IMG/VR virus record: IMGVR_UViG_3300025141_000016
Span: 62,001 to 126,000 of that record
Direction: 5' to 3' (one strand)
Length of the DNA: 64,000 bases
Shown one piece after another: positions 32,943 to 57,528 of this stretch. Within the stretch, counting starts at the first letter, position 1. Each line of letters opens with the position of its first letter. The notes under the pieces are model-generated. The model made no database searches, was not told the DNA's origin, and worked only from the letters and a program-made list of their open reading frames with translations. The position numbers and the translations under genes are program-made.

Positions 32943-32976
32943 CCTATACGGAGATAGGGGGGCGAGTTGAACCCCC
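32943..32976 (-). promoter_or_regulatory. Class E (putative early) promoter TTCAAC-N15-CGTA
   Basis: The reverse complement reads GGGGGTTCAACTCGCCCCCCTATCTCCGTATAGG, oriented with the minus-strand gene. Confidence 0.8.
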
Positions 32977-33962: not shown

Positions 33963-33997
33963 GGGGGGTTCAACTCGCCCCCCTATCTCCGTATGGG
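33963..33997 (+). promoter_or_regulatory. Class E promoter
   Basis: GGGGGGTTCAACTCGCCCCCCTATCTCCGTATGG. Confidence 0.8.
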
Positions 33998-34041
33998 GGT
34001 GAACCGCGTGACCCATGCCCCGTAGGGGGCCAGGAGCATCT

Positions 34042-34500: not shown

Positions 34501-34513
34501 CTTTCTTTCCCCA

Positions 34514-34548
34514 GGGGGGTTCAACTACCCCTGGTATCTCCGTATAGG
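34514..34548 (+). promoter_or_regulatory. Class E promoter
   Basis: GGGGGGTTCAACTACCCCTGGTATCTCCGTATAGG. Confidence 0.8.
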
Positions 34549-38386: not shown

Positions 38387-41300
38387 ATGTCCGACACTCC
38401 ACAAGTCTATGGTCCAGACGGCACCCTCCGCGAGACGGTCGTGTTCAGCACCACTGTCCTCACTCGGTTCTTTACGGGTGTGGTCCCCCCCAGTGCTGTC
38501 GAGGTGCAGGTATCTATCAATGGGAGCGGCTTCTCCTCGGACGAAACCCTCGCTCAATGGGGGGACGGTTCATGGGTGGTGCCCAACCCTTCCTATGAGC
38601 CCGATGGGCTGATTCTTTTGGAGGGTGAGAACACCGTTGAAGTGAGAGCCATCCTCCCCAGCGGGACGACCACAGGATCGGCAACTATGACGGTGAGGCT
38701 CGTCACCTCTGCGGACCTTGGAGTGGTAGTAGCTGCTCCCACCAACATCTCGGTGGTCCAACTAAACAATGCGGTTGTGGTCCAGGCCGAGGCCCCCGAG
38801 GACGATAACTTCACGGGGATGAACTACTACGCCTCGATTTACGCAGGGGGTGGGATCACAGGGTACACCCGGATCAATGTCGAGCGTATCGCAGAGGGCG
38901 CTATCACCCAGGAAACCTCCGAGTTTGCTTCGGAGACTGCCGAGTTTGCGGTCAGGGTTGATGCCAACAACGAGCCTGTTGCCGACCCGCTCTACTTCCG
39001 GCTGATGGCTCTCCAAGAAGACGAGGACGAAGCTGTCCTCCAGAGTGACCTTGATGAGCGGTATGAAGTTCCCGAAGAAGCCAGGACCATCCGACTGAAG
39101 TCCACCATGTCGCAGGTTCGGGAAGTGACGGCATACCAGTTCACCCATAACAGGCGGTCGGATCCGACTTCCACACCGGCCACAGTACGGGTCAGTTCTT
39201 TCTCCAACATGGACTCGGGCGACCCCCTTTACTATGTGGTGACTGCCGTTTTCTACGACACCGCCCAGGCCCTTGAATACGAGTCTGCTTTCTCTCCCGA
39301 GGTGGTGGGGAGCCCTGAACTGGTCACTACGGCTCTGGGAGCGATCCCCGCAGTCAATCGCCAGAGCATCGTCCGAGAGTTCATCACGGCCATCTTTAGG
39401 TCCAACCCCCAGATCAAGGTCGAGGTGGGGAGTGTCCTGCGAGACACGGTGATTGACCCGTTCTCATCAGAGAGCGAGAGGGTTCGGTTCCTCCTCGACT
39501 TCTATCACCGAGCACGGACTCCAACCCTCCTCCTCCAGATCGATGACCCCAGCGGATCTGGTACAAGCGTGGCGGTAGCTGACAGCGCCTACAAGCTGGG
39601 CCTCAAATCGGCGCTCTACATTGACTCGTCCCAGCAAGTCCAAGACTTGATCGACTCGGCTTTTGGGGCCTACGCGAGCAACCTCGGGATCCGTCGCCGG
39701 ACAGGAGCCGCTTCCCAAGGGGAAGTGCTGTTCTACACGTCCAAGAAGCCTTCCTCTTCCCTGGTGATCCCGTTGGGGACAACAGTGAGTGGAGGGGGAG
39801 TCTCCTTCATAACGACGCGGGAAGCCACCATCGCCTCTGCCACCATCGCCAGCTACTACAACCCTGTCACCGGGAACTACCAGATTTCGGTGCCCGTCAA
39901 CGCAGGAACCACGGGGTCTTCCACCAACGTCGGGATTGGGCAGATCAAGCAGATCGCCTCATCCGTGACTGGTTCTTTCAGCGTGACCAACTTGGCCGCG
40001 ATGGTGGGGGGACAGGATGCAGAATCCAACCTCGCGCTAACAGCCCGTATCCAGAATCGCCTTGCATCTGTCGATTCGGGGACGGCCCGAGGGTATCTCC
40101 AAACGGCTGCTGATGTACCCGGTGTGGTCAAGGCTAATGTCGTTGCTTCCGGGGATCTCCTCATGCAGCGGGACATAAACGACTCGGGGGTCCACAAGGG
40201 CGGCAAGGTAGATGTGTGGATTCAGGGCAGCAACGAGGTGACCATCACGGACACCTTTGCCTTCACCTTTGAGATAGCCCAGGACATTCAGTTTGAGGTT
40301 GTGGGGGCAGTCACCGACTACACTTTCCGTGCGCTGGACTCGACGTTGAGTGACAGTGACCCCATCGTGGAGATGCTGGACGATGCTGCTGTCGGCTACG
40401 AGTTCCGAAACGCCTCCACAGGGGAGGTCTTTGACCTTACTGGGGTCACCATCACCGCCTACAACACCATCCAGTTGGACACGGATCTTGCCCAACCAGC
40501 CGTAGACTTGACCGACGTGCTGTTGGGGTCGTACCGCCGACGGGTCGGAAGTGAGTTCATTCTCCCACGCCAACCTGTCAGTTCGATCACCGCCGTCGTT
40601 GGGACTGTGGCGGGAACTCTCCCCGAAACCGCTTACCTCTTGGTGCATCCTGATGCGCCCCTCGACATTGGGCGCTCCTCTCTTGCCACCGATTACCTCC
40701 AGATCATTGGGTACACCGATGATGATGGCGAGACTGTTCCCAGTGGGGACACCATCACTATCACCGACGAGGAACACGTCCTTATCGGTCAGTACCCCGA
40801 ATATGTGGACAACCTGGGGGCCAACTACTTGACCATCGTGGTCATGTCCTCGGATGGGCTCACTACCTACGCTGGACCAAACGACCCCGGTGGCAACCCC
40901 GACTACACCATCTCACTGGGAACACAGACCACAGCGGTATCCCTCACGCGAACGGAAGCCAGCACCATCCCGAATGGGGCGACTGTACTGGTGTCTTACT
41001 CGCATGATGAGAACTTCACGGCTACCTACACCACCAACCTGATCGTTGCCCTTACCCAGAACGCGGTGGATGAGGACAAGCACGTCACCGCTGATGTGGT
41101 CGTCAAGGAAGCAATCGAGGTTCCTCTGGACCTCGATTCCACCATCATCTTGATTCGGGGCAGGGACCAAGCAACGGTAGACACAAGCCTCCGCACCAAC
41201 CTCGCCAACTTCTTTGCCAATCTCCGTCTCGGAGATCCGGTACGTCAGTCAGACATTATCGACGTGATAGAGCAGACAGACGGGGTGTCCTATGTAGTCG

Positions 41301-41851
41301 TGCCTCTGACCAAGATGGTTCGGCAAGAGGGATCTACCGTCGTGCGGGAGGTCATCTCCACCGACACTGTGACCGAGAGCACCCTGGTCACGAGCCTGAC
41401 AACCAATACGGCGGTGGTGTTCCTCCTCAAAGAAGAACTGTCGGCAGCTACCACGGATGGGGGAGGCCCGGAAGGATCCTTCAAGTCCGTCTTCCAAGAC
41501 GACGTTGCGCTGACCCTACTGGATGAAGGGTCCACCTTGGCTTCGTTGGGGTCAGCCGTAGGGTATGTCTATATCCTCGGGTCCGAGGGGCGTTCCATCG
41601 AGGGTATCTCGGACGATGCGACACTTTACGCGGAAGGCTTCGTCACGCCAACAGCCGCCGAAGCCCGTCGGGTGGAACTCACGGCCAACCGTGTTCTCGT
41701 CTCCGTCGAGGCAGGAGATTCCCCCGTGGAGCACACCTACGCGGTGACCTATGTCGTAGGGGAAGACACCGGAGCCAAGAACATTGACCCGGATGAGGCC
41801 GAGTATTGCTCGGAGGGCACCTTTGTCCTCACCTATGACGAGGACCAGTAG
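38387..41851 (+). CDS. Baseplate J-like (gp6-like) protein
   Basis: GSVLRDTVIDP, GIRRRTGAASQGEVLF, GGQDAESNLAL..RI, GTARGY...VPGVVKANVV, GGKVDVWI. Confidence 0.85.
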   Translation: MSDTPQVYGPDGTLRETVVFSTTVLTRFFTGVVPPSAVEVQVSINGSGFSSDETLAQWGDGSWVVPNPSYEPDGLILLEGENTVEVRAILPSGTTTGSATMTVRLVTSADLGVVVAAPTNISVVQLNNAVVVQAEAPEDDNFTGMNYYASIYAGGGITGYTRINVERIAEGAITQETSEFASETAEFAVRVDANNEPVADPLYFRLMALQEDEDEAVLQSDLDERYEVPEEARTIRLKSTMSQVREVTAYQFTHNRRSDPTSTPATVRVSSFSNMDSGDPLYYVVTAVFYDTAQALEYESAFSPEVVGSPELVTTALGAIPAVNRQSIVREFITAIFRSNPQIKVEVGSVLRDTVIDPFSSESERVRFLLDFYHRARTPTLLLQIDDPSGSGTSVAVADSAYKLGLKSALYIDSSQQVQDLIDSAFGAYASNLGIRRRTGAASQGEVLFYTSKKPSSSLVIPLGTTVSGGGVSFITTREATIASATIASYYNPVTGNYQISVPVNAGTTGSSTNVGIGQIKQIASSVTGSFSVTNLAAMVGGQDAESNLALTARIQNRLASVDSGTARGYLQTAADVPGVVKANVVASGDLLMQRDINDSGVHKGGKVDVWIQGSNEVTITDTFAFTFEIAQDIQFEVVGAVTDYTFRALDSTLSDSDPIVEMLDDAAVGYEFRNASTGEVFDLTGVTITAYNTIQLDTDLAQPAVDLTDVLLGSYRRRVGSEFILPRQPVSSITAVVGTVAGTLPETAYLLVHPDAPLDIGRSSLATDYLQIIGYTDDDGETVPSGDTITITDEEHVLIGQYPEYVDNLGANYLTIVVMSSDGLTTYAGPNDPGGNPDYTISLGTQTTAVSLTRTEASTIPNGATVLVSYSHDENFTATYTTNLIVALTQNAVDEDKHVTADVVVKEAIEVPLDLDSTIILIRGRDQATVDTSLRTNLANFFANLRLGDPVRQSDIIDVIEQTDGVSYVVVPLTKMVRQEGSTVVREVISTDTVTESTLVTSLTTNTAVVFLLKEELSAATTDGGGPEGSFKSVFQDDVALTLLDEGSTLASLGSAVGYVYILGSEGRSIEGISDDATLYAEGFVTPTAAEARRVELTANRVLVSVEAGDSPVEHTYAVTYVVGEDTGAKNIDPDEAEYCSEGTFVLTYDEDQ

Positions 41852-42905: not shown

Positions 42906-43835
42906 ATGCCCACAAAGAAAGAGATTGAGATGGTCCATCTCGTTCAGAGCATCATCGAGAAGCCCGAAATGAGGAGATACCTAAAGAAGCACTACCAAAA
43001 GTCCATCGGGGAGGGGGCACACCCACACACGGGTTTTTGCAGCATGGCTTCGGATGCGCTGCGCCGTATTCTTGGGGGCCAAGTCCGGGGATTCTCGGGC
43101 TACAAACTGTGCCGCGTGGTGCATGAAGGTGAGCCCCACTATTACCTCACCACCCCTTCGGGAGAGGTGCTTGACCCCACGAGTTCCCAGTTCAAGAAAC
43201 GACCTCCTTATGATCGAGGGCGGGGAGTAGGGTTGCCCACCCCCAGTCGCATCCCTGGAACTGATGTTCAATCTCCTACACAGGGGGCGCGGGCAATCAT
43301 GGAGCACCGACGCAGATCCTCATCCTCTGGCCGGTATCCACCCTATCGAGGTCAGGGGGGTAGGAGAAGTATTATGAACCCTGACCGCTCGGCTCTCATC
43401 CGATTGGCCTCGGCGTTACCTGTCGGGAACGCAGACAGGAAGACCATCCTTACGGGGTTGACCTCCAGCCCATTGAGGACACGCCAAGCAGGGCGGGTTC
43501 CTTCCAACGCCCCAAAGCAAGTGAAGCAAGTGGCGAAGGCTTGGGTCCAGAGTGCCATCAAGGCAGGTGAGGAAGTGATCGCAGAGGAAGGGGAAACCGG
43601 GGCCGAGGCCAAGGGCACCCGTGGGTTCTGGAAGGACCGCCTCTATGTGTATGTTGAGGACTCCGACAAGGGTCCGCGCTGGGTCGTGGGGGACAACTAC
43701 GACCGAGCCACGAACATGATCTACTACCCCGATTCTGATGAGTGGTACTCGATGCCCAGCTATGGGTCAGAAAGGCTCATGCGCGGGGGTTTCCAAAACG
43801 CCTTGGGCAGCGCCGAGATCATCTGGACGGGCTGA
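42906..43835 (+). CDS. Papain/transglutaminase-like (Cys-His-Asp) domain joined in frame to a DRSALIRLAS-leader protein
   Basis: GFCSMASDAL...PHYYL...VLDPTSSQF. Internal AGGAG RBS and ATG at 43374 (MNPDRSALIRLAS). Confidence 0.6.
   Translation: MPTKKEIEMVHLVQSIIEKPEMRRYLKKHYQKSIGEGAHPHTGFCSMASDALRRILGGQVRGFSGYKLCRVVHEGEPHYYLTTPSGEVLDPTSSQFKKRPPYDRGRGVGLPTPSRIPGTDVQSPTQGARAIMEHRRRSSSSGRYPPYRGQGGRRSIMNPDRSALIRLASALPVGNADRKTILTGLTSSPLRTRQAGRVPSNAPKQVKQVAKAWVQSAIKAGEEVIAEEGETGAEAKGTRGFWKDRLYVYVEDSDKGPRWVVGDNYDRATNMIYYPDSDEWYSMPSYGSERLMRGGFQNALGSAEIIWTG
43332..43346 (+). promoter_or_regulatory. Class L motif internal to ORF 42906
   Basis: CGGTATccaccCTAT, then AGGAG and ATG 43374. Confidence 0.55.
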
Positions 43836-44166
43836 CCCTCGGGTCATCCGGTCCCAGGCCACGGCACCACTTGGAGTCGGATTGCGCCCACTTGGTCCTG
43901 GCCGTACCTCGCTTACCTTTCTTCAACGCTCGCTCTGCCTTCATCGCGTCGGAGCGTCCCTCATAGGGTCCGTACACGGCACGGATCACCCACGGTCGGT
44001 GCTTGCTGGTGTACTTCCCCCCACCCACGATCTCTCCGTTGTGTTGGCGAAGCCGACGAGCCACGTCGGTCGTACAGCCGACGTAGTGGAACCCAGGCAG
44101 CGGGTGACCCCGTTTGCCGACCCTGCGTTCAAGGGACTGAATGACGTAGACCCAGTATTCGGCCAT
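43819..44166 (-). CDS. GIY-YIG nuclease, SLX1-like
   Basis: WVYVIQS...YVGCTTDVARRLRQHNGEIVGGGKYTSKHRPW...AMKAE; GGAGG RBS. Confidence 0.88.
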   Translation of the reverse strand: MAEYWVYVIQSLERRVGKRGHPLPGFHYVGCTTDVARRLRQHNGEIVGGGKYTSKHRPWVIRAVYGPYEGRSDAMKAERALKKGKRGTARTKWAQSDSKWCRGLGPDDPRVSPSR

Positions 44167-44175
44167 CACTACCTC

Positions 44176-44190
44176 CGGTCGGGAGTCTAT
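44176..44190 (+). promoter_or_regulatory. Class L motif
   Basis: CGGTCGggagtCTAT upstream of 44220. Confidence 0.5.
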
Positions 44191-44219
44191 ACCCCTCCTC
44201 CCCACAGAGGACCGTACCC

Positions 44220-45092
44220 GTGAACCACCCATCCCCCAGCCGTGTGGCCTCCCGCTGGATCAAAGCAGCCCCCGCCGTGGATCTTGATCCACGGAAGGTC
44301 TACTACCACGGGACACCCTCGGAGAAGGCGGGGAAGTCCATCCTCCGCTCTGGCATCGAACCGCCTGACCTTTCGACCCGCAAGGGTCCGCTTCGCCCTG
44401 TGGGCGGCAAGGTGTACCTGACTGACAAACTCTCCTATGGGGTCATCTACGCTCTCGGGGGGGCCGTGGCAGGACACGAGTATCCTGAGCGGCATTGGCA
44501 GGGCAGCGAGTGGGGATACCTGTTCGTGGTGCCGGGGAAGGCTCTCAAAGAAGTCCAGCCCGATGAAGATTCCGTGGGAGAGATGATCTCAAACTCGACT
44601 GGTCCCGGCTGGCTTGATGACTTGGCCGAAGAAATCCTTACGAAGAAACACCCAGCAGAACCCGAGCCTATCGCATTGTCCTATTCGTTCGACTTCGACA
44701 GCGACTTGAATGACAAGGCCAAAGAGCAGTTCTTTTCAGACACGGGGATTGACCCCAGTACGTTCGACTACCACGACGACCGAATCACCCTTGAAGGTTG
44801 GTTTTGGGACGAGGGTTCTTCCTACAACGAGGACTGGTTTTGGGAATATGAGCAAGGGAACCTGTACGACCTCGTGATGGACGGTGACTATGCCGCCTGG
44901 GCTGAAGCCGGAAAGATCCTACTTGGTGAGATGGACTCCGAACAGGAGTTGGAGTTGATCTCATTGGGGGCACACATCGCCCATGAAGGGAAGATCACCC
45001 CGACCGAGTGCTGGAAGATCCACAAGAGCAAGGCACCCCTGTTGAAGAAGAACGGGTCCAACTTCTTTCAGGTTGCGGAGCGGTGCCGATGA
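44220..45092 (+). CDS. ADP-ribosyltransferase-fold protein with N-terminal PSPSRVASRW tag
   Basis: YYHGT...ILRSGI...VYLT...Y.VIYA pattern of H-Y-type ART domains. Confidence 0.6.
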   Translation: MNHPSPSRVASRWIKAAPAVDLDPRKVYYHGTPSEKAGKSILRSGIEPPDLSTRKGPLRPVGGKVYLTDKLSYGVIYALGGAVAGHEYPERHWQGSEWGYLFVVPGKALKEVQPDEDSVGEMISNSTGPGWLDDLAEEILTKKHPAEPEPIALSYSFDFDSDLNDKAKEQFFSDTGIDPSTFDYHDDRITLEGWFWDEGSSYNEDWFWEYEQGNLYDLVMDGDYAAWAEAGKILLGEMDSEQELELISLGAHIAHEGKITPTECWKIHKSKAPLLKKNGSNFFQVAERCR

Positions 45093-45574
45093 CCAAGCCT
45101 TCCCCCAGCCGTGTAGCCTCCCGTTACCGAGAGGCCGCGATCACCTTTCGGGATGAGAGTTCGCCCCGTGTGCAGTACGCCCGACGGTTCTCACTGTGTG
45201 ACTCGGAAGCAGACCCACCCCGCAAGCGTGAGTACCTGTTCACGGATGAGTACCGAACCCACAACCGCAAGACATACAAGCGGTTGAAGAAGCCGGTGCT
45301 GGAGAGCCGTGGGGTCACCGACCCTTGCGACGTTGCCTACATCGACTACGGCGGGGGCGGGAAAGACCTGTATCTTCATCTGGTGATCACGCGAGAAGAC
45401 CACCGAGGGAAAGGGCTCGCCACAAGGCTACTCAAAGAGTTCTACTCCAAGAAGGTGCCCAAGGGAGCGGTTGTGCGCTGGGGTCGCATTATGAACCCAA
45501 CCAGCATGGCTCTGTTTGAGAAGATGAAGAAAGCACGCCCCGATGTGGTTCACATGGGCGGCAAGTTCTACTGA
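45089..45574 (+). CDS. GNAT-family acetyltransferase with N-terminal PSPSRVASRY tag
   Basis: LYLHLVITREDHRGKGLATRLL; NPTSMALFEK. Confidence 0.75.
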   Translation: MTKPSPSRVASRYREAAITFRDESSPRVQYARRFSLCDSEADPPRKREYLFTDEYRTHNRKTYKRLKKPVLESRGVTDPCDVAYIDYGGGGKDLYLHLVITREDHRGKGLATRLLKEFYSKKVPKGAVVRWGRIMNPTSMALFEKMKKARPDVVHMGGKFY

Positions 45575-46488
45575 CTTGCTCGTAGTCGCCATTCCCCTGC
45601 TACCTCGCGGATGAGGCGCAGCATCCTGGCGATGAGGTTGGGGTTGGACTTGGTGAGTCGCGCAATCTCGGACTTCCGGTAGCCCTGGACCATCAGGCCA
45701 ACGCACTCATGGGAGAGGGTGGCGCACATCCCTCGTTCGGTGGCCCGACTCCCGACCATGGTCATCAGCCCATCCGTGAGGGTTTGGAGGTCTGTCTCGT
45801 CTTCCTGGGAGGGGCCGACTATGGCTATGTCTGCACCCGCAACGTCCTCTATTACATCATCGAGCCCTGGGACTCCGAAGACCTCGTTGCGCTCCAGGCG
45901 AGAGTACCGACGACGGTAGTTGGATACGATGCACCCACACACCATGTGGACATAGTGCCCGAAGGAACTCTTGCGGGGGTCAAAAGGGCACTTCCCACCA
46001 TTCCGCACAAGTAGGCCCTTGTAAATCTCTTGCAGCACATCGTCCGGGTCGTAGCCGTACTTGATGACGCGCCGACCGTATCCCGCATAGAACAGTTTTC
46101 GGACCTCGTGTCCCCGCTTCTCCAAGTCAATCCCCAAGGGGGCAACGGGAGCCTCAATGGAGAGGACACGGCTGGTGCGGATCATCGCCTTGGGTTTGAC
46201 AACCGTGAGGTCAGGACGATTCTTGAAAAGCCGGAGGGTGTCAATCGCAGGCTCGGGGGGCCGATAGGTTCCCTGGCGGAAGTAGCGATCAAAAGTGACC
46301 TTGGGATCACGGTGATGAGATCGAGGCTTGGGGTCTTGGTTGACCAACGCCATGATGGTCTGTCGAGCGGAGGGGTATCTCACCGATCCGTTGGGCCACG
46401 AGACGAGAAAACCATTGGTATCGGCCAACACGCGATGACCCCCATGTTCTGTGCGTGCGTAAAAGGTTCCCTCTGTCCTCATCAACAT
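45568..46488 (-). CDS. Phage-encoded sigma-70 ECF-like RNA polymerase sigma factor with N-terminal extension
   Basis: Region 2: DPDDVLQEIYKGLL...FDPRKSSFGHYVHMVCGCIVSNYRRR. Region 4 HTH: GYRKSEIARLTKSNPNLIARMLRLIR. Confidence 0.75.
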   Translation of the reverse strand: MLMRTEGTFYARTEHGGHRVLADTNGFLVSWPNGSVRYPSARQTIMALVNQDPKPRSHHRDPKVTFDRYFRQGTYRPPEPAIDTLRLFKNRPDLTVVKPKAMIRTSRVLSIEAPVAPLGIDLEKRGHEVRKLFYAGYGRRVIKYGYDPDDVLQEIYKGLLVRNGGKCPFDPRKSSFGHYVHMVCGCIVSNYRRRYSRLERNEVFGVPGLDDVIEDVAGADIAIVGPSQEDETDLQTLTDGLMTMVGSRATERGMCATLSHECVGLMVQGYRKSEIARLTKSNPNLIARMLRLIREVAGEWRLRASQ

Positions 46489-46585
46489 ACGATCTTCCTC
46501 CTCATCAGCGTAGATAGTGGTATCACAGTACCGACTTCCAGGGAAACCTTACCCCCTCATACAAGCCCTCAAAGGGGCGATGTGT

Positions 46586-46600
46586 CGATAGTGGTCTTAT
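46586..46600 (+). promoter_or_regulatory. Class L motif
   Basis: CGATAGtggtcTTAT upstream of 46676/47482. Confidence 0.55.
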
Positions 46601-46675
46601 ACCCCTCTGCGGGCAGAGAGGTGCGGACCATGTGCGCGAAATGCAGTAACGTACTGATCGGTTCCTGGCTTCCTG

Positions 46676-47479
46676 TTGGGGTACACCGATATGTATGAGA
46701 AAAACGCCGGAATCAAGGAATGGATGGGGTGGATGGCACAGCCTCTTTCCGTCATCCTGAAAGGGCACAAAGACCTCATCTACGGACCCGTGGATGGCCT
46801 GATGGATGAAGTGATCCGTCAGATCGCTCCCCAGATTGTGAAGGCCATTGGAGAACGAGAGATCGATGAGGACGTGGAGGAGTTTCTGGAAGGTGCCCAG
46901 GAAGGCCGTTTCGATGCCCTTTCAGGCTACCTTGCTGACCCTGACCTCACGGCCCCCGACGATGAACAGGCGGGTTACGACTGGGGGTTTTCTCATGCCG
47001 AGGAATGGAAGGGAAAGACTCTCCCCACCGCTGTCGAGCGAAAGGTGGTGCAGGAGCAGATCAAGGAGTTCCGAAGCCGTGTCACAGAAGAAGTGGTCAT
47101 TGACCTCATGGAAAAGACATGGCACGCCCTATCACCCTCCCACACCATCAAGGCCATCATCAGGGCCGTCAAGAAGCATGGTTGGAAACTCGGTATCGGG
47201 TTTGTGCTCTTTGAGATCGTTGAGCACGCCCTCTTGCCAGCCGTGATGATCAAGCTGACGGGCAACCCCCACTGGGCTATTTTGGGCACCCTCCCCATCG
47301 GTGAGATCATCTACGCCATCGCCATGCGTGTGTTGGGCAGGGCAGACAAGAACTTGGACAAGTTGGACGAGGACGGTCACTTGGATTGGTATGAGGCCAA
47401 GTACGGCCCGGTGAGACTGGCCTCCCAACGTCGCCCTTCGTGTGAGCAAGTCGCATACCGCTACTGCACAGGGAGGTAG
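46676..47479 (+). CDS. Hypothetical protein with hydrophobic hairpin and C-terminal PSCEQVAYRY tag
   Basis: Hydrophobic region LGIGFVLFEIVEHALLPAVMI...; start uncertain (ATG 46691). Confidence 0.65.
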   Translation: MGYTDMYEKNAGIKEWMGWMAQPLSVILKGHKDLIYGPVDGLMDEVIRQIAPQIVKAIGEREIDEDVEEFLEGAQEGRFDALSGYLADPDLTAPDDEQAGYDWGFSHAEEWKGKTLPTAVERKVVQEQIKEFRSRVTEEVVIDLMEKTWHALSPSHTIKAIIRAVKKHGWKLGIGFVLFEIVEHALLPAVMIKLTGNPHWAILGTLPIGEIIYAIAMRVLGRADKNLDKLDEDGHLDWYEAKYGPVRLASQRRPSCEQVAYRYCTGR

Positions 47480-47481
47480 CC

Positions 47482-49344
47482 ATGAGCAGTTGCCCCATTC
47501 GGTCACAGGCATACGGCGGCCTCCCTTCCGTCGGGGGCTTCGGATCCATCATGGAGTTCGGAGTCGGGCTTGGGACCATCTTTGAGGCCGCTCATTGTCT
47601 ACTTGGCTCCCTCGGCAAGAATCTGGGGAGAGAGGATGACTGGGTGGCGATGCTCGGTGTCGAGAAAGGCCATCTGAACGAGGAAGCTGGGATCATCAAG
47701 GACGCCCTCCGTGAGTATGCTCGACCTGTCTACCGCGAGCAGATGCTCGACTTCTCCCAGTACAAGCCCGAGTGGCAGGAGAGGATGCGGGAGTCTGCGG
47801 AGAGGCAGGTCGAGGACATTCAACAGGCTGGACCCAAGTTGGCCTCTCTCGCCAAGGGTAGGGCATCGGCTTTTGTGGAAAATCTGGAAACGGAGGATGC
47901 CCCTGTCGAGTGGGTGAACACCGTTGAGGCCACCTACCTCATGGTGATCGCGTTGGCCGAGGCTGCGGTGAAGGCCGTGAATGACTGGCCCGACTCTATG
48001 GGGAACCCCTTTGCGGACCCCAAGGTGACCCGAGCCGCTGGGCTCATGGAAAAGCATCTCGCGGCTCTGTTCCGATGGGGATCCTCCCAGCGGGTTGCGC
48101 GTCGATACGCTTCCCAGAAGTTCCAGTGGACGCGCTCTCCCCTCTCCTACAACGTGAGCGGGACTGCGAAGCGGCTCGGACTCCTCGACTCGGAAGCAGG
48201 TGACCCCGATGAGTGGGAGACTTACTTCGCGGAAACCCAAAAGGAACTCCGCAAGAAGAACCGCCAGCGGTACAAAAAGCCTCGGTACGAAACAATCCCT
48301 GGTGCGGAACCTGGGACGGTTGCCTTCCTCGACTACCACGAGTTCCCAAACTACTACGGGGACGGGAAACTCTACCTTTACCTCGACTATGTATCGACTC
48401 GGCATGACCGGCTCGGTCAGGGGCACGCTCGGAAGCTGTTTGAGGAGATGCTGCGGAAGCACGGCAAGGACTCCCACTACGATTTCGGACGCATCGCGCA
48501 CAAGGCGGTCTACAAGATTTTCCGCGACTGGCAGTCGCGGGGGATCAACGTCCGGGGAAAGAACTGGGGCGGCTACACCGACGAGGAAGTCGGCCTCCGA
48601 AGCGCCTCTGCCGTCCGGGTCGTTGCTCGCTTTGAAAATCTCCGAAAAACAGACCGGCACACCGTCTACCACGGGACAGGCATCGGCCAACTCCCCCAGT
48701 TGATCAATGGGTTTGATGCAACCAAGATGAAAGGCCGAAGCTACAACACGCGCCCCCACAAAGGGATGTTTGTCTCACCCGACCTTGCCACTGCAAAGAA
48801 GTTCGGTCAGGTGATCCTTGAACTGGAAATCCCCGCCCGTTTCCTGCATGGGCGCGATTGGGCCGGAAAACCCTTACACCCCAAACTACAAGAGGAAGCG
48901 GAAGGGATGTTCCCCGAGTCGTTCCGCCCCGACCTCTCTTACATGCTGGAAGCCGGGGAACCACAGGCATTGGTTCTTGGCCTCGTTTCGCCCAGGCAGA
49001 TCCGCCGCGTGCTTTATGACGGGAAATGGTACTCCCGTAAAGACTTCCTCGCCCTCGACTGGGAAGACCTCAAAACCCCTCGCCGTCGCCCTATGCGCGA
49101 TCTCGGAGTGGATGTTTCTGATCCCAGCCTTTCGTGGGAGGACTTCATAGAAGCCAGCGCAACTCTCTTTGAGTCACCCGTCGCCCGCATCCAAAAAGTG
49201 CTTGGTCGTTGGGTGGAGCAAGGGAAGAACGCCCGCTGGGTGGCGAAGCAGCTTGAAGTGGTGTGGGAACCTCTCACCGCTCGTCGCTATGCCGAACGAT
49301 TCTTCGGGACGCAAGACAGGGAGGCACAGAGGGGGATGCCGTGA
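47482..49344 (+). CDS. Multidomain protein: helical domain plus GNAT plus ART-like domain, separated by RVxxRY/F motifs
   Basis: SSQRVARRYA; LYLDYVSTRHDRLGQGHARKLF (GNAT); ASAVRVVARF; VYHGT...GMFVSPDLATAKKFG..ILELEI (ART). Confidence 0.7.
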   Translation: MSSCPIRSQAYGGLPSVGGFGSIMEFGVGLGTIFEAAHCLLGSLGKNLGREDDWVAMLGVEKGHLNEEAGIIKDALREYARPVYREQMLDFSQYKPEWQERMRESAERQVEDIQQAGPKLASLAKGRASAFVENLETEDAPVEWVNTVEATYLMVIALAEAAVKAVNDWPDSMGNPFADPKVTRAAGLMEKHLAALFRWGSSQRVARRYASQKFQWTRSPLSYNVSGTAKRLGLLDSEAGDPDEWETYFAETQKELRKKNRQRYKKPRYETIPGAEPGTVAFLDYHEFPNYYGDGKLYLYLDYVSTRHDRLGQGHARKLFEEMLRKHGKDSHYDFGRIAHKAVYKIFRDWQSRGINVRGKNWGGYTDEEVGLRSASAVRVVARFENLRKTDRHTVYHGTGIGQLPQLINGFDATKMKGRSYNTRPHKGMFVSPDLATAKKFGQVILELEIPARFLHGRDWAGKPLHPKLQEEAEGMFPESFRPDLSYMLEAGEPQALVLGLVSPRQIRRVLYDGKWYSRKDFLALDWEDLKTPRRRPMRDLGVDVSDPSLSWEDFIEASATLFESPVARIQKVLGRWVEQGKNARWVAKQLEVVWEPLTARRYAERFFGTQDREAQRGMP

Positions 49345-49446: not shown

Positions 49447-49481
49447 GGGGGGTTCAACTCGGGCCGGTATCTCCGTATAGG
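49447..49481 (+). promoter_or_regulatory. Class E promoter
   Basis: GGGGGGTTCAACTCGGGCCGGTATCTCCGTATAGG. Confidence 0.8.
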
Positions 49482-49553: not shown

Positions 49554-49766
49554 ATGGGCCGCAAAATCCGCCGTCAACGTGCCAAGGGCAAACGGGCTGA
49601 CCGTATCCACGCCAGCATCAAGGCCCAGCGTGGGCTCGACAGGGCTGAACACTTCGCCAAGGGTGGCGATCTCGTTCAGTATTGGGGTGGACCCAAGACG
49701 GTGACGCGAAACCGCAAGCGGGATGCGTCCCGTAATGCGTGTCGCGTCACCGTGAAGGACTACTAA
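49554..49766 (+). CDS. Small basic hypothetical protein
   Basis: GGAGA RBS; R/K-rich, 70 aa. Confidence 0.65.
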   Translation: MGRKIRRQRAKGKRADRIHASIKAQRGLDRAEHFAKGGDLVQYWGGPKTVTRNRKRDASRNACRVTVKDY

Positions 49767-51884: not shown

Positions 51885-51919
51885 GGGGGGTTCAACTCGC
51901 CCCCCTATCTCCGTATAGG
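51885..51919 (+). promoter_or_regulatory. Class E promoter
   Basis: GGGGGGTTCAACTCGCCCCCCTATCTCCGTATAGG. Confidence 0.8.
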
Positions 51920-52477: not shown

Positions 52478-54526
52478 ATGTCCAAGAATCTCGACACCCT
52501 TGCTCTGGCCCAGCGTCTTCGTGAAGCCTCCGCTGCCTACTACAGCGGGGGCAAGCCCTCTATGTCCGATGCCGAGTTCGATGCACTGGAAGCCGACCTC
52601 CGCAAGCGTGACCCCAAGCATCCTGCGCTCGCAGAGGTGGGTGCGCCTCCGTCCTCCGGCTGGCCCAAGGTCACCCATCCCATCACCATGGGATCGCTGG
52701 CGAAGGTTCAGAACAATGCCGAGTTGGACTCCTGGGTCACCCCTCTTGTCCGCAACAGCAGAATCGGGGGATGGAACTCTAATGGGTCCAAACTCCGCGA
52801 AGGGAACCAGGGCTGGTGCGTCACCGAGAAGATGGACGGGATTTCCGTTCTCCTGACATACACGGACGGTGTTCTTGTCCGAGCCGCCACCCGTGGTGAC
52901 GGAACCACGGGGGAAGACATTACGCGCAACGTGCGAGTAATGAAGGGTGTCCCGGCCACGCTGCCAACGCTCCCTCGTGGGGACGTTCATATCCGTGGCG
53001 AGATCATCTGCAAGAAGTCCGACTTTCTCCGAGAGTTCGCGGCAGATGGGTACAGCAACCCCCGCAACACGGCTTCGGGAACCTCCAAGCGTCATAGCGG
53101 ATGGCAGAAGTGCCGCCACCTGACGGTCTACGCCTACAACCTGTTCGGAGCCGGTGTCCCTGCCGATGCCGACAAGCGCACTTCGGAGATGATTACCCTG
53201 GCGAAATGGGGGTTCAATGTCCCCTGGACCGAGGCGACCGCGTTTGAGGGAGGTGGGGGAACCACCTCGACCGACCGTATCCAGGCTTTCCACGACCTCT
53301 ACACCAGCGGTAAGCGTGAGTCGCGAGACTACGAGATAGACGGTCTGGTGGTGGAGGTGAACGACACGGCTTCCCGCGAATCCCTTGGCACGACCCCAGA
53401 TGGTATGCGTCCGAAAGGCGCAGTGGCGTACAAGTTCCCGCATGAAGCCCAGCAGACCACCCTGCGAAACATTCGTTGGCAGGTCGGCACGACGGGTCGC
53501 GTGACCCCTGTGGCCGAGTTCGATGCTGTGGACCTTGCGGGCGCGTCGGTCAAACAGGCCAGCCTCCACAACCTCGCCAACATCGAGAAGTTGACTAACG
53601 GTGCTGGGTTCATGGAGAACGCCACCATCCTCGTATCTCGGCGCAACGACGTAATCCCTTATGTCGAGGCGTTGCTGTCCCAGCATCCCCAGGAAGATGA
53701 GTTTGAGGCACCCCACGACTGCCCCGAGTGTGGGTTCGACTTGGCGATGGACGGGGAATACCTCGTCTGCGGTAACGGAGGCGACGGCCCAGGTGATCTG
53801 GGGTGCCCCGCACAAATCCTTGGTGGTATCCGACGCTGGATCAAGAAGATCGGTGTGCTCCACTTCGGGGACCGGCTCATTGAAGCGGTTGTCGAGGCAG
53901 GGATGGTCAAGACCATCCCCGACCTTTATCGGCTGGACGAACAAGCGATGGCTGCGCTTTCGCTCAACGGTCGTCGTGTCGGTGGGGCTGCAAAGCGGGC
54001 TCTGGGTTCACTTCATGCTCACAAGACCCTCCCCCTCGATACCTTCGTGGGATCGTTGGGCATCCCGTTGTGTGGTCGCCGCATGGTGGGGATGCTCATG
54101 GATGCTGGTATCTGTGACCTCAACATGCTGTCCGAGGCTACCGAGGCCCAACTGGCTCTCGCCCCTGGATTCGGCGTGGACAAGGCCAGGGCATTCCGGG
54201 TCGGGTTCGATGAGTGCAGGGACACCATCATTGGCCTGTACGCCGTCGGAGTCACCGTGGCTCCCCCCCAGCCCAAGACCGCTACCTCGGGGGTCCTCTC
54301 CGGTGTGTCCGTCTGCATGACAGGCTTCCGTGACAAGTCCATGGAGAACGCCATCAGTGCTGCCGGGGGGACTGTGAAGTCCAGCGTCAGCAAGGCTCTC
54401 GGATTGTTGGTCGCCAAAGACCCCAACAGCACGTCGGGGAAGGCGAAGAAAGCGCGGTCCCACGGCATCGAGGTCATTGACCCAGCCGAGATGTGGACAC
54501 GCCTGGGGGGTCAGGCCCAGCCTTGA
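52478..54526 (+). CDS. ligA: NAD+-dependent DNA ligase
   Basis: AYY...SDAEFD, EKMDG, TRGDGTTGEDIT, RGE, NPRN, DGLVV, AVAYKF, CPEC...C...C Zn finger, HhH, BRCT (VCMTG). Confidence 0.96.
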   Translation: MSKNLDTLALAQRLREASAAYYSGGKPSMSDAEFDALEADLRKRDPKHPALAEVGAPPSSGWPKVTHPITMGSLAKVQNNAELDSWVTPLVRNSRIGGWNSNGSKLREGNQGWCVTEKMDGISVLLTYTDGVLVRAATRGDGTTGEDITRNVRVMKGVPATLPTLPRGDVHIRGEIICKKSDFLREFAADGYSNPRNTASGTSKRHSGWQKCRHLTVYAYNLFGAGVPADADKRTSEMITLAKWGFNVPWTEATAFEGGGGTTSTDRIQAFHDLYTSGKRESRDYEIDGLVVEVNDTASRESLGTTPDGMRPKGAVAYKFPHEAQQTTLRNIRWQVGTTGRVTPVAEFDAVDLAGASVKQASLHNLANIEKLTNGAGFMENATILVSRRNDVIPYVEALLSQHPQEDEFEAPHDCPECGFDLAMDGEYLVCGNGGDGPGDLGCPAQILGGIRRWIKKIGVLHFGDRLIEAVVEAGMVKTIPDLYRLDEQAMAALSLNGRRVGGAAKRALGSLHAHKTLPLDTFVGSLGIPLCGRRMVGMLMDAGICDLNMLSEATEAQLALAPGFGVDKARAFRVGFDECRDTIIGLYAVGVTVAPPQPKTATSGVLSGVSVCMTGFRDKSMENAISAAGGTVKSSVSKALGLLVAKDPNSTSGKAKKARSHGIEVIDPAEMWTRLGGQAQP

Positions 54527-54857: not shown

Positions 54858-54891
54858 GGGGGGTTCAACTCCCCCACCTATCTCCGTATAG
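54858..54891 (+). promoter_or_regulatory. Class E promoter
   Basis: GGGGGGTTCAACTCCCCCACCTATCTCCGTATAG. Confidence 0.8.
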
Positions 54892-54940: not shown

Positions 54941-55309
54941 ATGACCCGAGAAACCACCATCATCGAGCGCGGGACCGCTGCTCGTCGTCTCGTGGAGTCT
55001 GTCGATGAGCGTCGGCGTGAACGCGCCAACCGCATCGACGTGATCAACGCCACCGAGCGAGGGGACCGCCTCATCGCTACCGTCCGGTCGGAAGACAAGG
55101 CGAAGACCTACAACACCGTGATCTCCCTCGACGTGAGGGGACGGCGAGGTTGGGTGCGCTGTGACTGTGATGACAACCACCGACGGAACTTGCCCTGCAA
55201 GCACTCTGTTGCTGTTGCCAACCGCTACCGCGCTACGAAGCGCGAGGAACTTCTACGGCTCCGGGGGGATGCCGCCACCCAGGACACTCCAACCCCGGAA
55301 AAACCATGA
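54941..55309 (+). CDS. SWIM zinc-finger protein
   Basis: VRSE...YNTVI...CDCDD...PCKHSVAV. Confidence 0.8.
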   Translation: MTRETTIIERGTAARRLVESVDERRRERANRIDVINATERGDRLIATVRSEDKAKTYNTVISLDVRGRRGWVRCDCDDNHRRNLPCKHSVAVANRYRATKREELLRLRGDAATQDTPTPEKP

Positions 55310-56702: not shown

Positions 56703-56737
56703 GGGGGGTTCAACTCGCCCCGGTATCTCCGTATAAG
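56703..56737 (+). promoter_or_regulatory. Class E promoter
   Basis: GGGGGGTTCAACTCGCCCCGGTATCTCCGTATAAG. Confidence 0.8.
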
Positions 56738-56757: not shown

Positions 56758-57528
56758 ATGACCCGAACAATAATCATTGGCGACGTTCACGGAATGTTGC
56801 CCGAACTGGAAAGCCTCTTGGGGCGACTCCAACCTACGACGGACGACGAGGTTGTCTTTGTCGGTGACCTCGTGGACAAAGGCCCCGATAGCGTTGGGGT
56901 GGTCCGGCGAGTGCGCGAACTGGCCGACACGGTGCCTGTGGTGCTCGTAGAGGGCAACCACGAGGACAAGCACCGACGGTTCCGTAAGAACCTGACCGTG
57001 CGGCCCGAAGTGGCTGCGGGTCAAGCCGAGCGGCAACCTGAACTGGCTACCATCACGGAAGGCTTGTCCGAAGAAGACGTGGCTTTCCTCGACGGTGCGG
57101 TCATGTTCCACCGAGTCCCCGACCATGGGGTGCTCGTGGTTCACGGTGGCATCCCTGGCGATATGGTCGAGTTCCCAGCCACCCCCGAGGAAGCCGCTGC
57201 GTTGACAGGCAAGGCCAAGAGAGCACTGTCCAAGACCCTGCGGACACGCTACCTTTCGGGAGAGACTGGCAAGTTTCTCCAGTTGGGCAAAGAGGGACCG
57301 GAAGACCCGTTCTGGGCCGGGGTCTGGGATGGGCGGTTCGGGCACGTTGTCTTCGGGCACGAGCCTTTCCTGGCTGGTCCCGCATTGTTCCCCCACGCTA
57401 CTGGTGTGGATACGGGAGCGGTGTTCGGTGGATCGTTGACGGCCTTGGTCATTGACGATGCGGGTGAGCGGTCCTTCGTGTCCGTCCCCAGCCGTCCAAT
57501 GGCTCCTTTCCGCTTCATGCTGACATAG
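56758..57528 (+). CDS. Calcineurin-like metallophosphoesterase (ApaH/PrpE/Pnkp-phosphatase-like)
   Basis: IGDVHG, VGDLVDKGP, GNHE, VHGG, VFGH, GVDTGAVFGGSLTA. Confidence 0.92.
   Translation: MTRTIIIGDVHGMLPELESLLGRLQPTTDDEVVFVGDLVDKGPDSVGVVRRVRELADTVPVVLVEGNHEDKHRRFRKNLTVRPEVAAGQAERQPELATITEGLSEEDVAFLDGAVMFHRVPDHGVLVVHGGIPGDMVEFPATPEEAAALTGKAKRALSKTLRTRYLSGETGKFLQLGKEGPEDPFWAGVWDGRFGHVVFGHEPFLAGPALFPHATGVDTGAVFGGSLTALVIDDAGERSFVSVPSRPMAPFRFMLT

What the first reader, a model, noticed from the sequence alone, without database searches (positions are those of the whole stretch)
45568..46488. Phage ECF-like sigma factor with a ~115-aa N-terminal extension
Seen: region 2 and region 4 signatures preceded by an unrelated N-terminal domain. 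It is one of the few minus-strand genes and is divergent from a class L unit. Inference: it is the likely reader of the class E or class L motif, so both regulator and target sites lie in this window. The extension may be regulatory.
Basis: partly seen in the sequence, partly recalled or inferred. Interest (0 to 1): 0.6.

Follow-up and report, generated by a model that had tools for sequence, protein, structure and literature searches.

The report
Huge-phage sigma factor with novel N-domain
This gene of a roughly 300-kb marine phage encodes a two-domain (ECF-like) sigma factor fused to a conserved N-terminal domain with no structural match in the libraries searched, and it probably redirects the host RNA polymerase to about 23 phage promoters of the type GGTTCAAC-N15-CGTATA, seven of which lie in this window.

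Summary
The 306-aa minus-strand ORF at 45568-46488 is real. Pfam finds nothing in the single sequence. A 39-member family profile matches a solved sigma-H colinearly across sigma2 and sigma4, 26 of 39 members touch Sigma70_r2, and the AlphaFold model superposes domain by domain on ECF sigma2 (residues 119-204) and sigma4 (226-306). Residues 1-75 form a confident, basic, beta-rich domain with no structural match, joined by a disordered 30-66-aa linker. An exhaustive profile search finds this domain only in front of this sigma.

De novo motif discovery gives a bipartite element, GGGGGGTTCAAC-N15-CGTATAG, with about 23 copies in the genome and 7 in the window (0.01 expected). The copies are intergenic and sit 5-110 nt upstream of co-oriented genes. 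Six related phages carry variants that keep a (C)GTA -10 core but change the -35 half. This parallels the protein: sigma2 is 60-95 % identical and sigma4 14-51 %.

The sigma gene has a different upstream element, and distant orthologs have sigma70-type promoters, which suggests a cascade. No phage RNAP was detected. The sigma call is solid. The sigma-to-motif pairing is inferred (about 0.6). The N-domain's function is unknown. This is a new variant of a known kind.

The parts
45568..46488 (-). Sigma-factor gene, 306 aa (P0001), including the stop codon
   Evidence: ORF list and translation. There are 592 full-length homologs on phage contigs of up to 350 kb.
46264..46488 (-). N-terminal domain, residues 1-75: four strands and a helix, followed by the invariant [TS]-F-x-x-Y-F motif. 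Basic, mean net charge +6.
   Evidence: AF2 pLDDT>90 in two models. Best PDB match Z 3.9 and best Atlas TM by query 0.43. Of the 150 listed hits of the exhaustive profile search, 122 carry this sigma's sigma2 core, and the exceptions are truncated ORFs or partial FN3-repeat matches. Charge.
46135..46263 (-). Linker 1, residues 76-118: disordered, Pro/Leu/Ser-rich, variable in length (30-66 aa)
   Evidence: pLDDT 41-60. Mean pairwise identity 0.31. Composition.
45877..46134 (-). Sigma2 domain, residues 119-204. Nearly invariant core: GIDL..EVRKLFYA..DPEDVLQE..CPFD..KSSFGHYVHMV..NY.RR
   Evidence: VIA-align Z 8.4 to RpoE sigma2, plus SigK, SigR-N and SigE-N. TIGR02937 and Sigma70_r2 weak hits. 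Mean pairwise identity 0.72.
45742..45876 (-). Linker 2, residues 205-249: acidic (mean net charge -6.8) sigma2-sigma4 connector. There is no sigma3 domain.
   Evidence: Low pLDDT over residues 201-230, with no room for a three-helix sigma3 domain. Charge.
45571..45741 (-). Sigma4 domain (HTH), residues 250-306; the structural match starts at about residue 226. Fast-evolving.
   Evidence: Z 9.2 to 3mzy sigma4, Z 8.4 to CnrH, Z 7.3 to sigmaE region 4 bound to -35 DNA. Mean pairwise identity 0.28.
46497..46503 (-). Shine-Dalgarno GAGGAGG, 8 nt before the ATG
   Evidence: Read from the sequence.
46529..46555 (-). Class-2 promoter-like element (GGGGT-N18-GGTA) upstream of the sigma gene, ending 41 nt before the ATG
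   Evidence: Conserved upstream of the sigma orthologs in L001-L006. About 23-25 intergenic copies in the genome. Strict pattern: 31 observed against 8 in the reversed control. Coordinates.
46513..46521 (+). Copy 1 of the local direct repeat GATAGTGGT (ACCACTATC on the sigma strand), just downstream of the class-2 GGTA. Possible operator.
   Evidence: The only paired intergenic occurrence in the genome. Function unknown.
46587..46595 (+). Copy 2 of the local direct repeat GATAGTGGT, upstream of the class-2 element
32946..32971 (-). Class-1 promoter-like site (TTCAAC-N15-CGTAT), 20 nt before a 69-aa gene
33969..33994 (+). Class-1 site upstream of the PNK-like AAA_33 gene (34015-34500)
34520..34545 (+). 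Class-1 site heading the plus-strand run of genes that leads to baseplate-J (38387-41851)
49453..49478 (+). Class-1 site nearest to the sigma gene, upstream of a 70-aa gene (49554-49766)
51891..51916 (+). Class-1 site upstream of the NAD-dependent DNA ligase region (52478-54526)
54864..54889 (+). Class-1 site upstream of the SWIM zinc-finger gene (54941-55309)
56709..56734 (+). Class-1 site upstream of the metallophosphoesterase gene (56758-57528)
43819..44232 (-). GIY-YIG gene (137 aa), the conserved same-strand downstream partner of sigma in relatives. Here it is separated from sigma by two inserted plus-strand genes.
   Evidence: Pfam PF01541 E=2.7e-9. Synteny in L001-L003 and L005-L007, with 56-93 % identity.

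Best explanation
The gene encodes a phage sigma factor of the minimal two-domain (group-4, ECF-like) type. It is made early, from a promoter that does not depend on it: a class-2 element here, and sigma70-type promoters in distant relatives. It then binds the host RNA polymerase core; no phage RNAP was detected. Its nearly invariant sigma2 domain reads a conserved -10 element with a (C)CGTA core. Its fast-evolving sigma4 domain reads a lineage-specific -35 element, GGTTCAAC in this phage. Together they switch on about 23 transcription units, 7 of them in this window. These units include repair-type enzymes (PNK-like, NAD-ligase, phosphoesterase), many small unknown genes, and the operon that runs into baseplate-J. 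The family-exclusive, basic N-terminal domain on its flexible tether is an accessory module acting in cis. My best guess is that it docks on a conserved protein surface (RNAP, or the sigma2 domain itself) to control or stabilise holoenzyme formation, and does not set promoter specificity. Shown here: the ORF, the sigma2 and sigma4 folds, the family, the motifs with their placement, and the comparative pattern. Inferred: RNAP binding, the sigma-to-class-1 pairing, the timing, and the N-domain's role.
For: Sigma identity: the profile hits sigma-H 3mzy at E=1.2e-4 across both domains. 26 of 39 members hit Sigma70_r2. Domain-wise structural matches to ECF sigma2 and sigma4 reach Z 8-9, and the characterised phage sigma gp36 (9m7y_F) matches at Z 7.6 over residues 119-306. 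There is no sigma3 domain and the sigma2-sigma4 linker is acidic. Target: class 1 gives 7 exact sites in the window against 0.01 expected. About 23 copies occur in the genome, intergenic, mostly 5-110 nt upstream of co-oriented genes, with an A/T run upstream. The AAC...CGT layout is typical of ECF promoters (my own knowledge). Comparative: the same geometry (a G-G/T-T/A-T start lying 22-23 nt before CGTA) was found, mostly de novo, in G001, G003 (14 copies), G004 (26), G006 (14) and G007 (CCGTAWR in 37 of 162 upstream regions against 6 in the control), with a diverged form in G009. The -10 core is conserved and the -35 varies, in parallel with sigma2 at 0.60-0.95 identity and sigma4 at 0.14-0.51. 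Class 2 is identical in G000 and G003, where class 1's -35 and sigma4 both differ, and class 2 is absent from G007. The sigma gene lacks class 1 upstream. Distant orthologs have sigma70-type promoters, for example TTGACA-N17-TACAAT in L009. This is the only sigma-like gene detected in G000, G001, G003 and G006, and no RNAP beta core was found in any of the six records searched (G000, G001, G003, G006, G007, G009). Precedent: phiEco32 gp36 works this way (PMC12276001).
Against: There is no experimental or transcript evidence; only DNA runs hold this phage. The single sequence fails the Pfam and NCBIfam thresholds. G007 also encodes two canonical sigma genes that could read class 1 there. The 68-kb fragment G002 and the N-domain-less-sigma phage G012 showed no class-1-type motif. 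Overall sigma4 identity does not sort by -35 type: G000-G003 score 0.51 and G000-G001 score 0.40. Many class-1 genes are small unknowns that look like typical early genes, which would be awkward for a promoter class that needs a phage-made sigma. G000 is only about 67 % complete, so another sigma or an RNAP could lie in the missing part. The PF00940 search rang in no control genome, so it is uninformative.
Confidence: 0.6

Rival explanations
1. The sigma reads class 2 (GGGGGGT-N17/18-GGTA), which includes its own promoter. That would give ECF-style positive autoregulation together with the replication genes. Class 1 would then be read by another factor.
For: Class 2 sits 41 nt upstream of the sigma gene and is conserved upstream of orthologs L001-L006. 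Autoregulation is typical of ECF sigmas (my own knowledge). In G004 the sigma's upstream element (GGGGGGT-N20-GTAGAG) has the same spacing and -10 as that phage's class 1, so the two classes may overlap.
Against: Class 2 is absent from G007 (2-4 observed against 5-14 in the control), although the sigma family and a CGTA class are present there. Distant orthologs carry sigma70-type promoters instead. Class 2 is unchanged between G000 and G003 even though their sigma4 domains are only 51 % identical.
Confidence: 0.15
2. Class 1 is read by a host sigma or by an undetected phage factor or RNAP, and this sigma reads a third, undetected class such as late promoters.
For: Class-1 genes look early-like: small unknowns and repair enzymes. 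G000 is incomplete. A possible third motif, cGGTA-N5-CCCTATC, occurs about 28 nt before some starts. In G000 a hairpin brackets the -35, which recalls hairpin promoters of phage-encoded RNAPs (my own knowledge).
Against: The CGTA-type class tracks the sigma family across phages of 45-62 % GC, which presumably infect different hosts. No RNAP beta core was found in any of the six records searched, including the complete G009. The hairpin is absent in G003, G006 and G007.
Confidence: 0.15
3. The protein has a sigma fold but does not act as an initiation factor. It could be a decoy that sequesters RNAP or host anti-sigma factors, or a plain HTH repressor.
For: It scores below the threshold of every curated sigma model. 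It has an unusual N-terminal domain. Complex prediction gave no information.
Against: Both sigma domains are present in the canonical order with an acidic linker. The sigma2 core, including the DPEDVLQE-type segment, is under very strong constraint. A matching bipartite promoter class co-occurs with it.
Confidence: 0.07

Closest known systems
phiEco32 gp36, a phage-encoded distant sigma homolog (PDB 9m7y chain F; PMC12276001)
   Same: It is a two-domain sigma2-like plus sigma4-like phage protein that uses the host RNAP core. It is made under sigma70 control and then drives a phage-specific promoter class defined mainly by a -10-region element. The structural match is Z 7.6 over residues 119-306.
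   Different: gp36 has no N-terminal domain and relies on a separate co-factor, gp79, which displaces sigma70 and stabilises gp36. Its -10 element is AATGTA. I found no detectable sequence homology by the searches run. The present family comes from about 200-440-kb phages, not a 77-kb podophage.
Bacterial ECF (group 4) sigma factors such as SigH, SigK, RpoE, CnrH and SigW
   Same: Only sigma2 and sigma4 are present. These are the best structural matches. The candidate promoters have the ECF-like AAC (-35) and CGT (-10) layout.
   Different: It fails the curated HMM cutoffs. It has no adjacent anti-sigma gene and no class-1 motif at its own promoter. It carries a folded 75-aa N-terminal domain. 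It is phage-encoded, and phage ECFs were not captured by the ECF classification (PMC7826278).
ECF sigmas with N-terminal extensions: BldN (ECF121, a cleaved pro-sequence), SigC (ECF36s4) and sigmaR' (ECF12), all from PMC7826278
   Same: An N-terminal extension precedes sigma2, joined through a region that could be cleaved or regulated.
   Different: According to PMC7826278, those extensions are rare and generally shorter than C-terminal ones. Here the extension is a well-folded, strongly conserved, basic domain (mean pairwise identity 0.56, higher than sigma4) plus a long linker, and it is found only in this family.
T4 gp55 and SPO1 gp28/gp34, phage sigma cascades (my own knowledge; PMC7824862 for jumbo phages)
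   Same: Phage-encoded sigma proteins reprogram the host RNAP in temporal cascades. Jumbo phages without their own RNAP commonly encode sigmas.
   Different: gp55 is a minimal, sigma2-only protein that is activated by the sliding clamp. Here both domains are present. A link to the clamp was considered but not supported: the clamp gene occurs with both N-domain-bearing and N-domain-less sigmas.

Membership tests
Sigma-70 family, group 4 (ECF) | Sigma2 domain fold | tested here: met
   Residues 116-204 match RpoE (Z 8.4, 2.4 A, 79 aa) and also SigK, SigR-N and SigE-N. 26 of 39 members hit Sigma70_r2.
Sigma-70 family, group 4 (ECF) | Sigma4 domain fold (HTH) | tested here: met
   Residues 226-306 match 3mzy (Z 9.2), CnrH (Z 8.4, 2.0 A), SigD4, SigR region 4 and sigmaE region 4 bound to -35 DNA. 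The profile alignment to 3mzy runs through sigma4.
Sigma-70 family, group 4 (ECF) | Absence of the sigma1.1 and sigma3 domains | tested here: met
   Between sigma2 and sigma4 there is only a 45-aa acidic linker with low pLDDT. The N-terminal domain is basic and beta-rich, so it is not sigma1.1-like.
Sigma-70 family, group 4 (ECF) | Scores above the curated family thresholds (Pfam Sigma70_r2 and r4_2; TIGR02937) | tested here: not met
   P0001 has no Pfam sigma hit at E<=1. TIGR02937 scores 13.7 bits against a 42.9-bit cutoff.
Sigma-70 family, group 4 (ECF) | Cognate anti-sigma factor encoded next to the sigma gene | tested here: not met
   The conserved downstream gene is a GIY-YIG protein. 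The other neighbours are a GNAT, a 290-aa ORF and unknowns, and none gave an anti-sigma family hit. A novel anti-sigma cannot be excluded.
Sigma-70 family, group 4 (ECF) | Autoregulation: own promoter carries the target motif | tested here: not met
   There is no class-1 site in 46489-46690. A class-2 element is there instead. This row would be met under the rival reading in which the sigma reads class 2.
Sigma-70 family, group 4 (ECF) | Bipartite target promoters of the AAC(-35)/CGT(-10) type | tested here: inconclusive
   A candidate regulon has exactly this layout, but its link to this protein is inferred only from co-occurrence and parallel conservation.
Sigma-70 family, group 4 (ECF) | Binds RNAP core and confers promoter-specific initiation | not testable with these tools
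   The host is unknown and there are no RNA data. This needs biochemistry.
phiEco32 gp36-like phage sigma | Structural similarity to gp36 over both domains | tested here: met
   9m7y_F: Z 7.6, 157 residues aligned, model range 119-306. The rmsd is high (17 A) because the relative domain orientation differs.
phiEco32 gp36-like phage sigma | Partner co-factor of the gp79 type | not tested
   I did not search for a gp79 homolog. The N-domain might supply such a function in cis, but that is speculation.

The most novel reading that the evidence does not exclude
The family-exclusive N-terminal domain, with its invariant [TS]-F-x-x-Y-F edge motif on a long tether, is a built-in takeover module. In this reading it docks on host RNAP, or on another conserved machine, to evict the host sigma or to gate holoenzyme assembly. 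It would do in cis what phiEco32 does with the separate protein gp79. That would make this a self-contained sigma-plus-appropriator of a kind not yet described, with a regulon whose -35 specificity has diversified naturally across hundreds of phages.
Probability: 0.2. Interest if true: 0.75.

Novelty: new variant of a known kind. Interest (0 to 1): 0.55.

Why it matters
Phage sigma factors that hijack host RNAP are a known principle, and some members of this family already carry an automatic 'sigma24' label. Three things are new here. First, this is a large and coherent family: at least 592 clusters at 90 % identity, and 170 representatives at 50 % identity that carry the N-domain, found in marine and other huge phages. 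Second, the sigma is fused to a folded N-terminal domain that has no structural match in the libraries searched and occurs nowhere else. Third, a concrete and testable regulon has a conserved -10 half and a naturally diversified -35 half. Transcription programmes of uncultivated huge phages are essentially unknown, so a sigma/promoter pair readable from sequence lets their genomes be partitioned into temporal units. The set of orthologs with different -35 specificities would also be a ready source of orthogonal sigma/promoter pairs. Finally, the N-domain could reveal a new way of regulating or anchoring a sigma factor.

Tried and rejected
1. Single-sequence searches found no usable sigma assignment: Pfam, PHROGs, NCBIfam and PDB phmmer gave either no hit or only sub-threshold hits.
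2. N-domain fold searches gave no convincing match: VIA-align against 48,161 PDB chains (best Z 3.9), the ESM Atlas by features and by structure, and a weak profile hit to DUF2559 at E=0.58.
3. Complex prediction of the N-domain (1-75) against sigma2-sigma4 (119-306) gave no verdict (score 0.00). This is neither support nor evidence against binding.
4. The clamp-coupling idea (a T4-like mechanism through the F-x-x-Y-F motif) is unsupported: the phage clamp gene occurs with both N-domain-bearing and N-domain-less sigmas.
5. A fine co-variation test was inconclusive: overall sigma4 identity does not sort by -35 type.
6. GATAGTGGT as a genome-wide class is rejected. It is only a local pair flanking the sigma promoter.
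7. TGACCCCAC as a promoter is rejected. It has about 75 copies, mostly inside genes and on both strands.
8. CTCCCGAGGA is a coding tandem repeat outside the window.
9. No sigma70-type promoter was found near the sigma gene in this window.
10. RNA evidence is not available: only marine DNA runs hold the phage, so I did not use read laying.
11. No class-1-type motif was found in G002 or G012, and the exact TYTCCGTAWR word is not enriched in G011-G015.
12. The PF00940 search for a T7-type RNAP rang in no control genome and is uninformative.
13. A phage-collection tblastn found only one unannotated 485-kb record.
Full report
OBSERVATION. The minus-strand ORF 45568-46488 encodes 306 aa, with an ATG start and a GAGGAGG ribosome-binding site 8 nt upstream. 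The window is positions 62001-126000 of a 297,104-bp linear viral record. It has 59.5 % GC and CheckV estimates it at about 67 % complete. Only marine-metagenome DNA runs hold it. The window encodes baseplate-J, a beta-helix fibre-like protein, a family-A DNA polymerase, SNF2 and DnaB helicases and an NAD-dependent ligase, so this is a tailed huge phage. A crude gene map based on codon usage shows that the sigma gene is a lone minus-strand gene among plus-strand neighbours.

IS IT A SIGMA FACTOR? The single sequence is not recognised by Pfam even at E<=1 or by PDB phmmer. NCBIfam gives only a hint: TIGR02937, E=0.035, residues 138-202.

The word-index search found 592 homologs. All are about 300 aa and match over their full length, on contigs of up to 350 kb. 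Some are labelled 'sigma24 family' by IMG and most are 'hypothetical'.

A 39-sequence alignment (A1) shows five segments:
- a conserved N-terminal domain (residues 1-75);
- a variable linker (76-118);
- a nearly invariant block (119-204);
- an acidic variable linker (205-249);
- a weakly conserved C-terminal helical domain (250-306).

The A1 profile hits the solved sigma-H 3mzy_A at E=1.2e-4, colinear over both halves. 26 of 39 members individually touch Sigma70_r2, 3 touch Sigma70_r4_2 and 4 touch Sigma70_ECF.

The AF2 model has mean pLDDT 82 and pTM 0.35, meaning rigid domains in flexible arrangement. By Foldseek it returns almost only sigma factors, though at weak E-values from 4e-3. By domain-tolerant alignment, residues 116-204 match ECF sigma2 domains (RpoE: Z 8.4, 2.4 A over 79 aa; also SigK, SigR-N and SigE-N). 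Residues 226-306 match sigma4 domains (3mzy: Z 9.2; CnrH: Z 8.4, 2.0 A; also SigD4, SigR region 4 and sigmaE region 4 on -35 DNA). The characterised phage sigma gp36 of phiEco32 (9m7y_F) scores Z 7.6 over residues 119-306.

There is no sigma3 and no sigma1.1. I regard the sigma assignment as solid (about 0.9). Curated ECF thresholds are not met, so it is ECF-like and not a filed ECF member.

THE N-TERMINAL EXTENSION. Residues 7-70 fold confidently as four strands and a helix, ending in the most invariant motif of the domain, [TS]-F-x-x-Y-F. pLDDT exceeds 90 in both the full-length model and a domain-only model.

No structural relative was found. The best of 48,161 PDB representatives scores Z 3.9 and none reaches 5. 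The best Atlas TM by query is 0.43, and the Atlas feature search gave nothing usable.

A clean N-domain profile (A4) was searched exhaustively against 1.84 billion representatives and found 170 proteins at E<=1e-3. Of the 150 listed, 122 carry this family's sigma2 core and 110 its sigma4. The exceptions are short ORFs that look truncated, and FN3-repeat giants that match only a 24-residue hairpin. The domain is therefore exclusive to this sigma.

The domain is basic (mean net charge +6.1), unlike the acidic sigma1.1. Its tether is Pro/Leu/Ser-rich and 30-66 aa long. A sister sub-family (L013, L016-L020) has the same sigma2 core but short, unrelated N-termini, so the domain is an accessory module.

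A complex prediction of the N-domain with sigma2-sigma4 gave no verdict. A clamp-docking idea found no support from co-occurrence. The function remains open.

CANDIDATE TARGETS. Intergenic k-mer enrichment found one dominant composite element. Read in the direction of the genes, its consensus is t.t.t...aGGGGGGTTCAACTC.CCC...tATCTCCGTATAgg.Gtg (22 sites). I call this class 1.

The core pattern TTCAAC-N15-CGTAT occurs 7 times in the window against 0.01 expected, and none of 100 shuffles reached that count. About 23 copies occur genome-wide. Nearly all are intergenic, co-oriented with a gene start 5-110 nt downstream, and preceded by an A/T run. This is promoter behaviour, and the AAC/CGT layout is ECF-like (my own knowledge).

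In the window, class 1 heads a PNK-like ATPase, the gene run leading to baseplate-J, a 70-aa gene, the NAD-ligase region, a SWIM protein and a metallophosphoesterase. Elsewhere it heads mostly unknown proteins.

A second class, class 2 (gGGGGGt-N17-cgGGTA), has about 23-25 intergenic copies. The strict pattern gives 31 observed against 8 in the reversed control. It heads the DNA polymerase, clamp, primase, exonuclease and methyltransferase genes, and the sigma gene itself at 46529-46555.

COMPARATIVE TEST. I fetched the full records of relatives and looked for motifs, mostly de novo.
- G001 (sigma 66 % identical): the window's class 1, 4 copies in 42 kb.
- G003 (67 %): CGTTAAAAC-N13-CGTAAGTAGGTGA, 14 copies.
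- G004 (50 %): GGGGGTTCC-N15-CCGTA[GAT], 26 copies, its top dyad.
- G006 (50 %): GGKTTCCC-N14/15-(A)CGTAA, 14 copies.
- G007 (34 %, only 45 % GC): GGGATCG-N17-CGTATA. The word TTTCCGTATA occurs about 19 times against fewer than 1 expected, and CCGTAWR is in 37 of 162 upstream regions against 6 in the control. No other recurrent class was found.
- G009 (38 %, complete genome): a more diverged GGYCTTATY-N13-AGAGTAGTCTAGGTG.

In most of them the element is followed 15-45 nt later by GGAGG and ATG.

The -10 core (C)GTA is therefore conserved while the -35 half changes. The protein shows the same asymmetry. Sigma2 has mean pairwise identity 0.72, and 0.60-0.95 among the seven orthologs, and the KSSFGHYVHMV..NY.R segment is almost invariant. 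Sigma4 has mean pairwise identity 0.28, and 0.14-0.51 among the orthologs.

Class 2 is unchanged between G000 and G003 and is absent from G007. Distant sigma orthologs are preceded by sigma70-type promoters: TTGACA-N17-TACAAT in L009, and similar ones in L010 and L014.

This family is the only sigma-like gene detected in G000, G001, G003 and G006. No RNAP beta core was detected in any of the six records searched (G000, G001, G003, G006, G007, G009).

Together this supports a cascade like that of phiEco32 (PMC12276001): a promoter independent of this sigma drives sigma expression, and sigma then drives class 1.

CAVEATS.
- G007 has two further canonical sigma genes.
- G002 (a 68-kb fragment) and G012 (N-domain-less sigma) gave no class-1-type motif.
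- Overall sigma4 identity does not sort by -35 type.
- Many class-1 genes look early-like.
- There are no RNA data, and the genome is incomplete.

I put the sigma-to-class-1 pairing at about 0.6, the rival in which sigma reads class 2 (autoregulation) at about 0.15, and the rival in which another reader handles class 1 at about 0.15.

COMPARISON WITH KNOWN SYSTEMS. The protein works like phiEco32 gp36, SPO1 gp28 and other phage sigmas that appropriate host RNAP. Jumbo phages lacking their own RNAP commonly encode sigmas (PMC7824862).

By fold and domain content it is ECF-like. However, it fails the curated HMM cutoffs, lacks an adjacent anti-sigma gene, and does not carry its presumed target motif at its own promoter.

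The ECF re-classification paper (PMC7826278) notes three relevant points. N-terminal extensions are rare and generally shorter than C-terminal ones. BldN's cleaved pro-sequence is the only well-described case. Phage ECFs were not captured by the classification. A folded, conserved, family-exclusive N-terminal domain is therefore a new variant.

The claim that the gene is divergent from a class L unit was not reproduced.

Noticed in passing
Class-1 sites in the window (e.g. 33955-33990, 34506-34541) and genome-wide: In this phage only, a G-run/C-run hairpin of 4-11 bp brackets the -35 TTCAAC, which sits in the loop. Over 21 sites the mean z is -3.0 against shuffles, and some stems show compensatory changes. 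The hairpin is absent in the variants of G003, G006 and G007, and it is not terminator-like. Its function is unknown.
   Followed up: partly
Whole genome; e.g. window 827, 2609, 11181, 22204, 43172, 45317: The 9-mer TGACCCCAC occurs about 75 times in 297 kb, mostly inside genes and on both strands, against a chance expectation of a few. It is also over-represented in relative G003. It could be a Chi-like, uptake-related or methylation-related word, or a codon effect (Asp-Pro-Thr).
   Followed up: no
Window 45008-45574 (+) and 47482-49344 (+): GNAT-type acetyltransferase paralogs flank the sigma gene. Residues 170-347 of the 620-aa protein match the 188-aa GNAT protein at E=2e-15 (32 % identity), including a shared 'S.RVA.RY' N-terminal motif. 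The 290-aa ORF 44220-45092 has a faint PARP/ART-like hit (E=0.19). Together with sigma this may form a host-takeover module.
   Followed up: partly
Window 43819-44232 (-): A small GIY-YIG protein lies directly downstream of sigma, on the same strand, in relatives L001-L003 and L005-L007. At 56-93 % identity it is often more conserved than sigma itself. In this window two plus-strand genes have been inserted between the two.
   Followed up: partly
Window 45877-46134 (-), sigma2 residues 167-188: Two cysteines (C167, C186) are invariant across the whole family, including the N-domain-less branch. H178 is invariant and H181 nearly invariant (at least 90 %) in the main clade. The spacing is C-x10-H-x2-H-x4-C, which could be a metal or redox site inside sigma2. 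I could not check the geometry.
   Followed up: no
Window 46513-46521 and 46587-46595 (+); hairpin near 46608-46625: The local direct repeat GATAGTGGT flanks the sigma gene's class-2 promoter, at roughly +5 and -60 relative to it. A short palindrome, CTCTGC-GG-GCAGAG, lies in the same intergenic region. These may be operator sites for an unknown regulator of sigma expression.
   Followed up: partly
Upstream regions genome-wide, e.g. window 26353 and 46488; genome positions outside the window: A possible third upstream motif, cGGTA-N5-CCCTATC, occurs about 25-30 nt before several start codons. I have not established it as a class.
   Followed up: no
Proteins P0134, P0204, P0214, P0217, P0219 (not in the window): The N-domain hairpin 'GF.V.WP.G...YPSARQT' resembles a repeated segment of FN3-repeat giant proteins ('GYKVQWKSG..YDAARQATV'). 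These gave multi-stretch hits in the exhaustive search. This is probably motif-level similarity only.
   Followed up: no
Relative G007: 155358-155504 and 191336-191539: This distant relative (45 % GC) encodes two additional canonical sigma-70-family genes (Sigma70_r2 E=1e-12 and 3e-18) besides the ortholog of this family. It may therefore run a three-sigma programme.
   Followed up: no
Genome 224543-224660 (outside the window): A tandem 15-nt repeat of units such as GAACCTGCTCCCGAG. Its reading frame was not checked.
   Followed up: no
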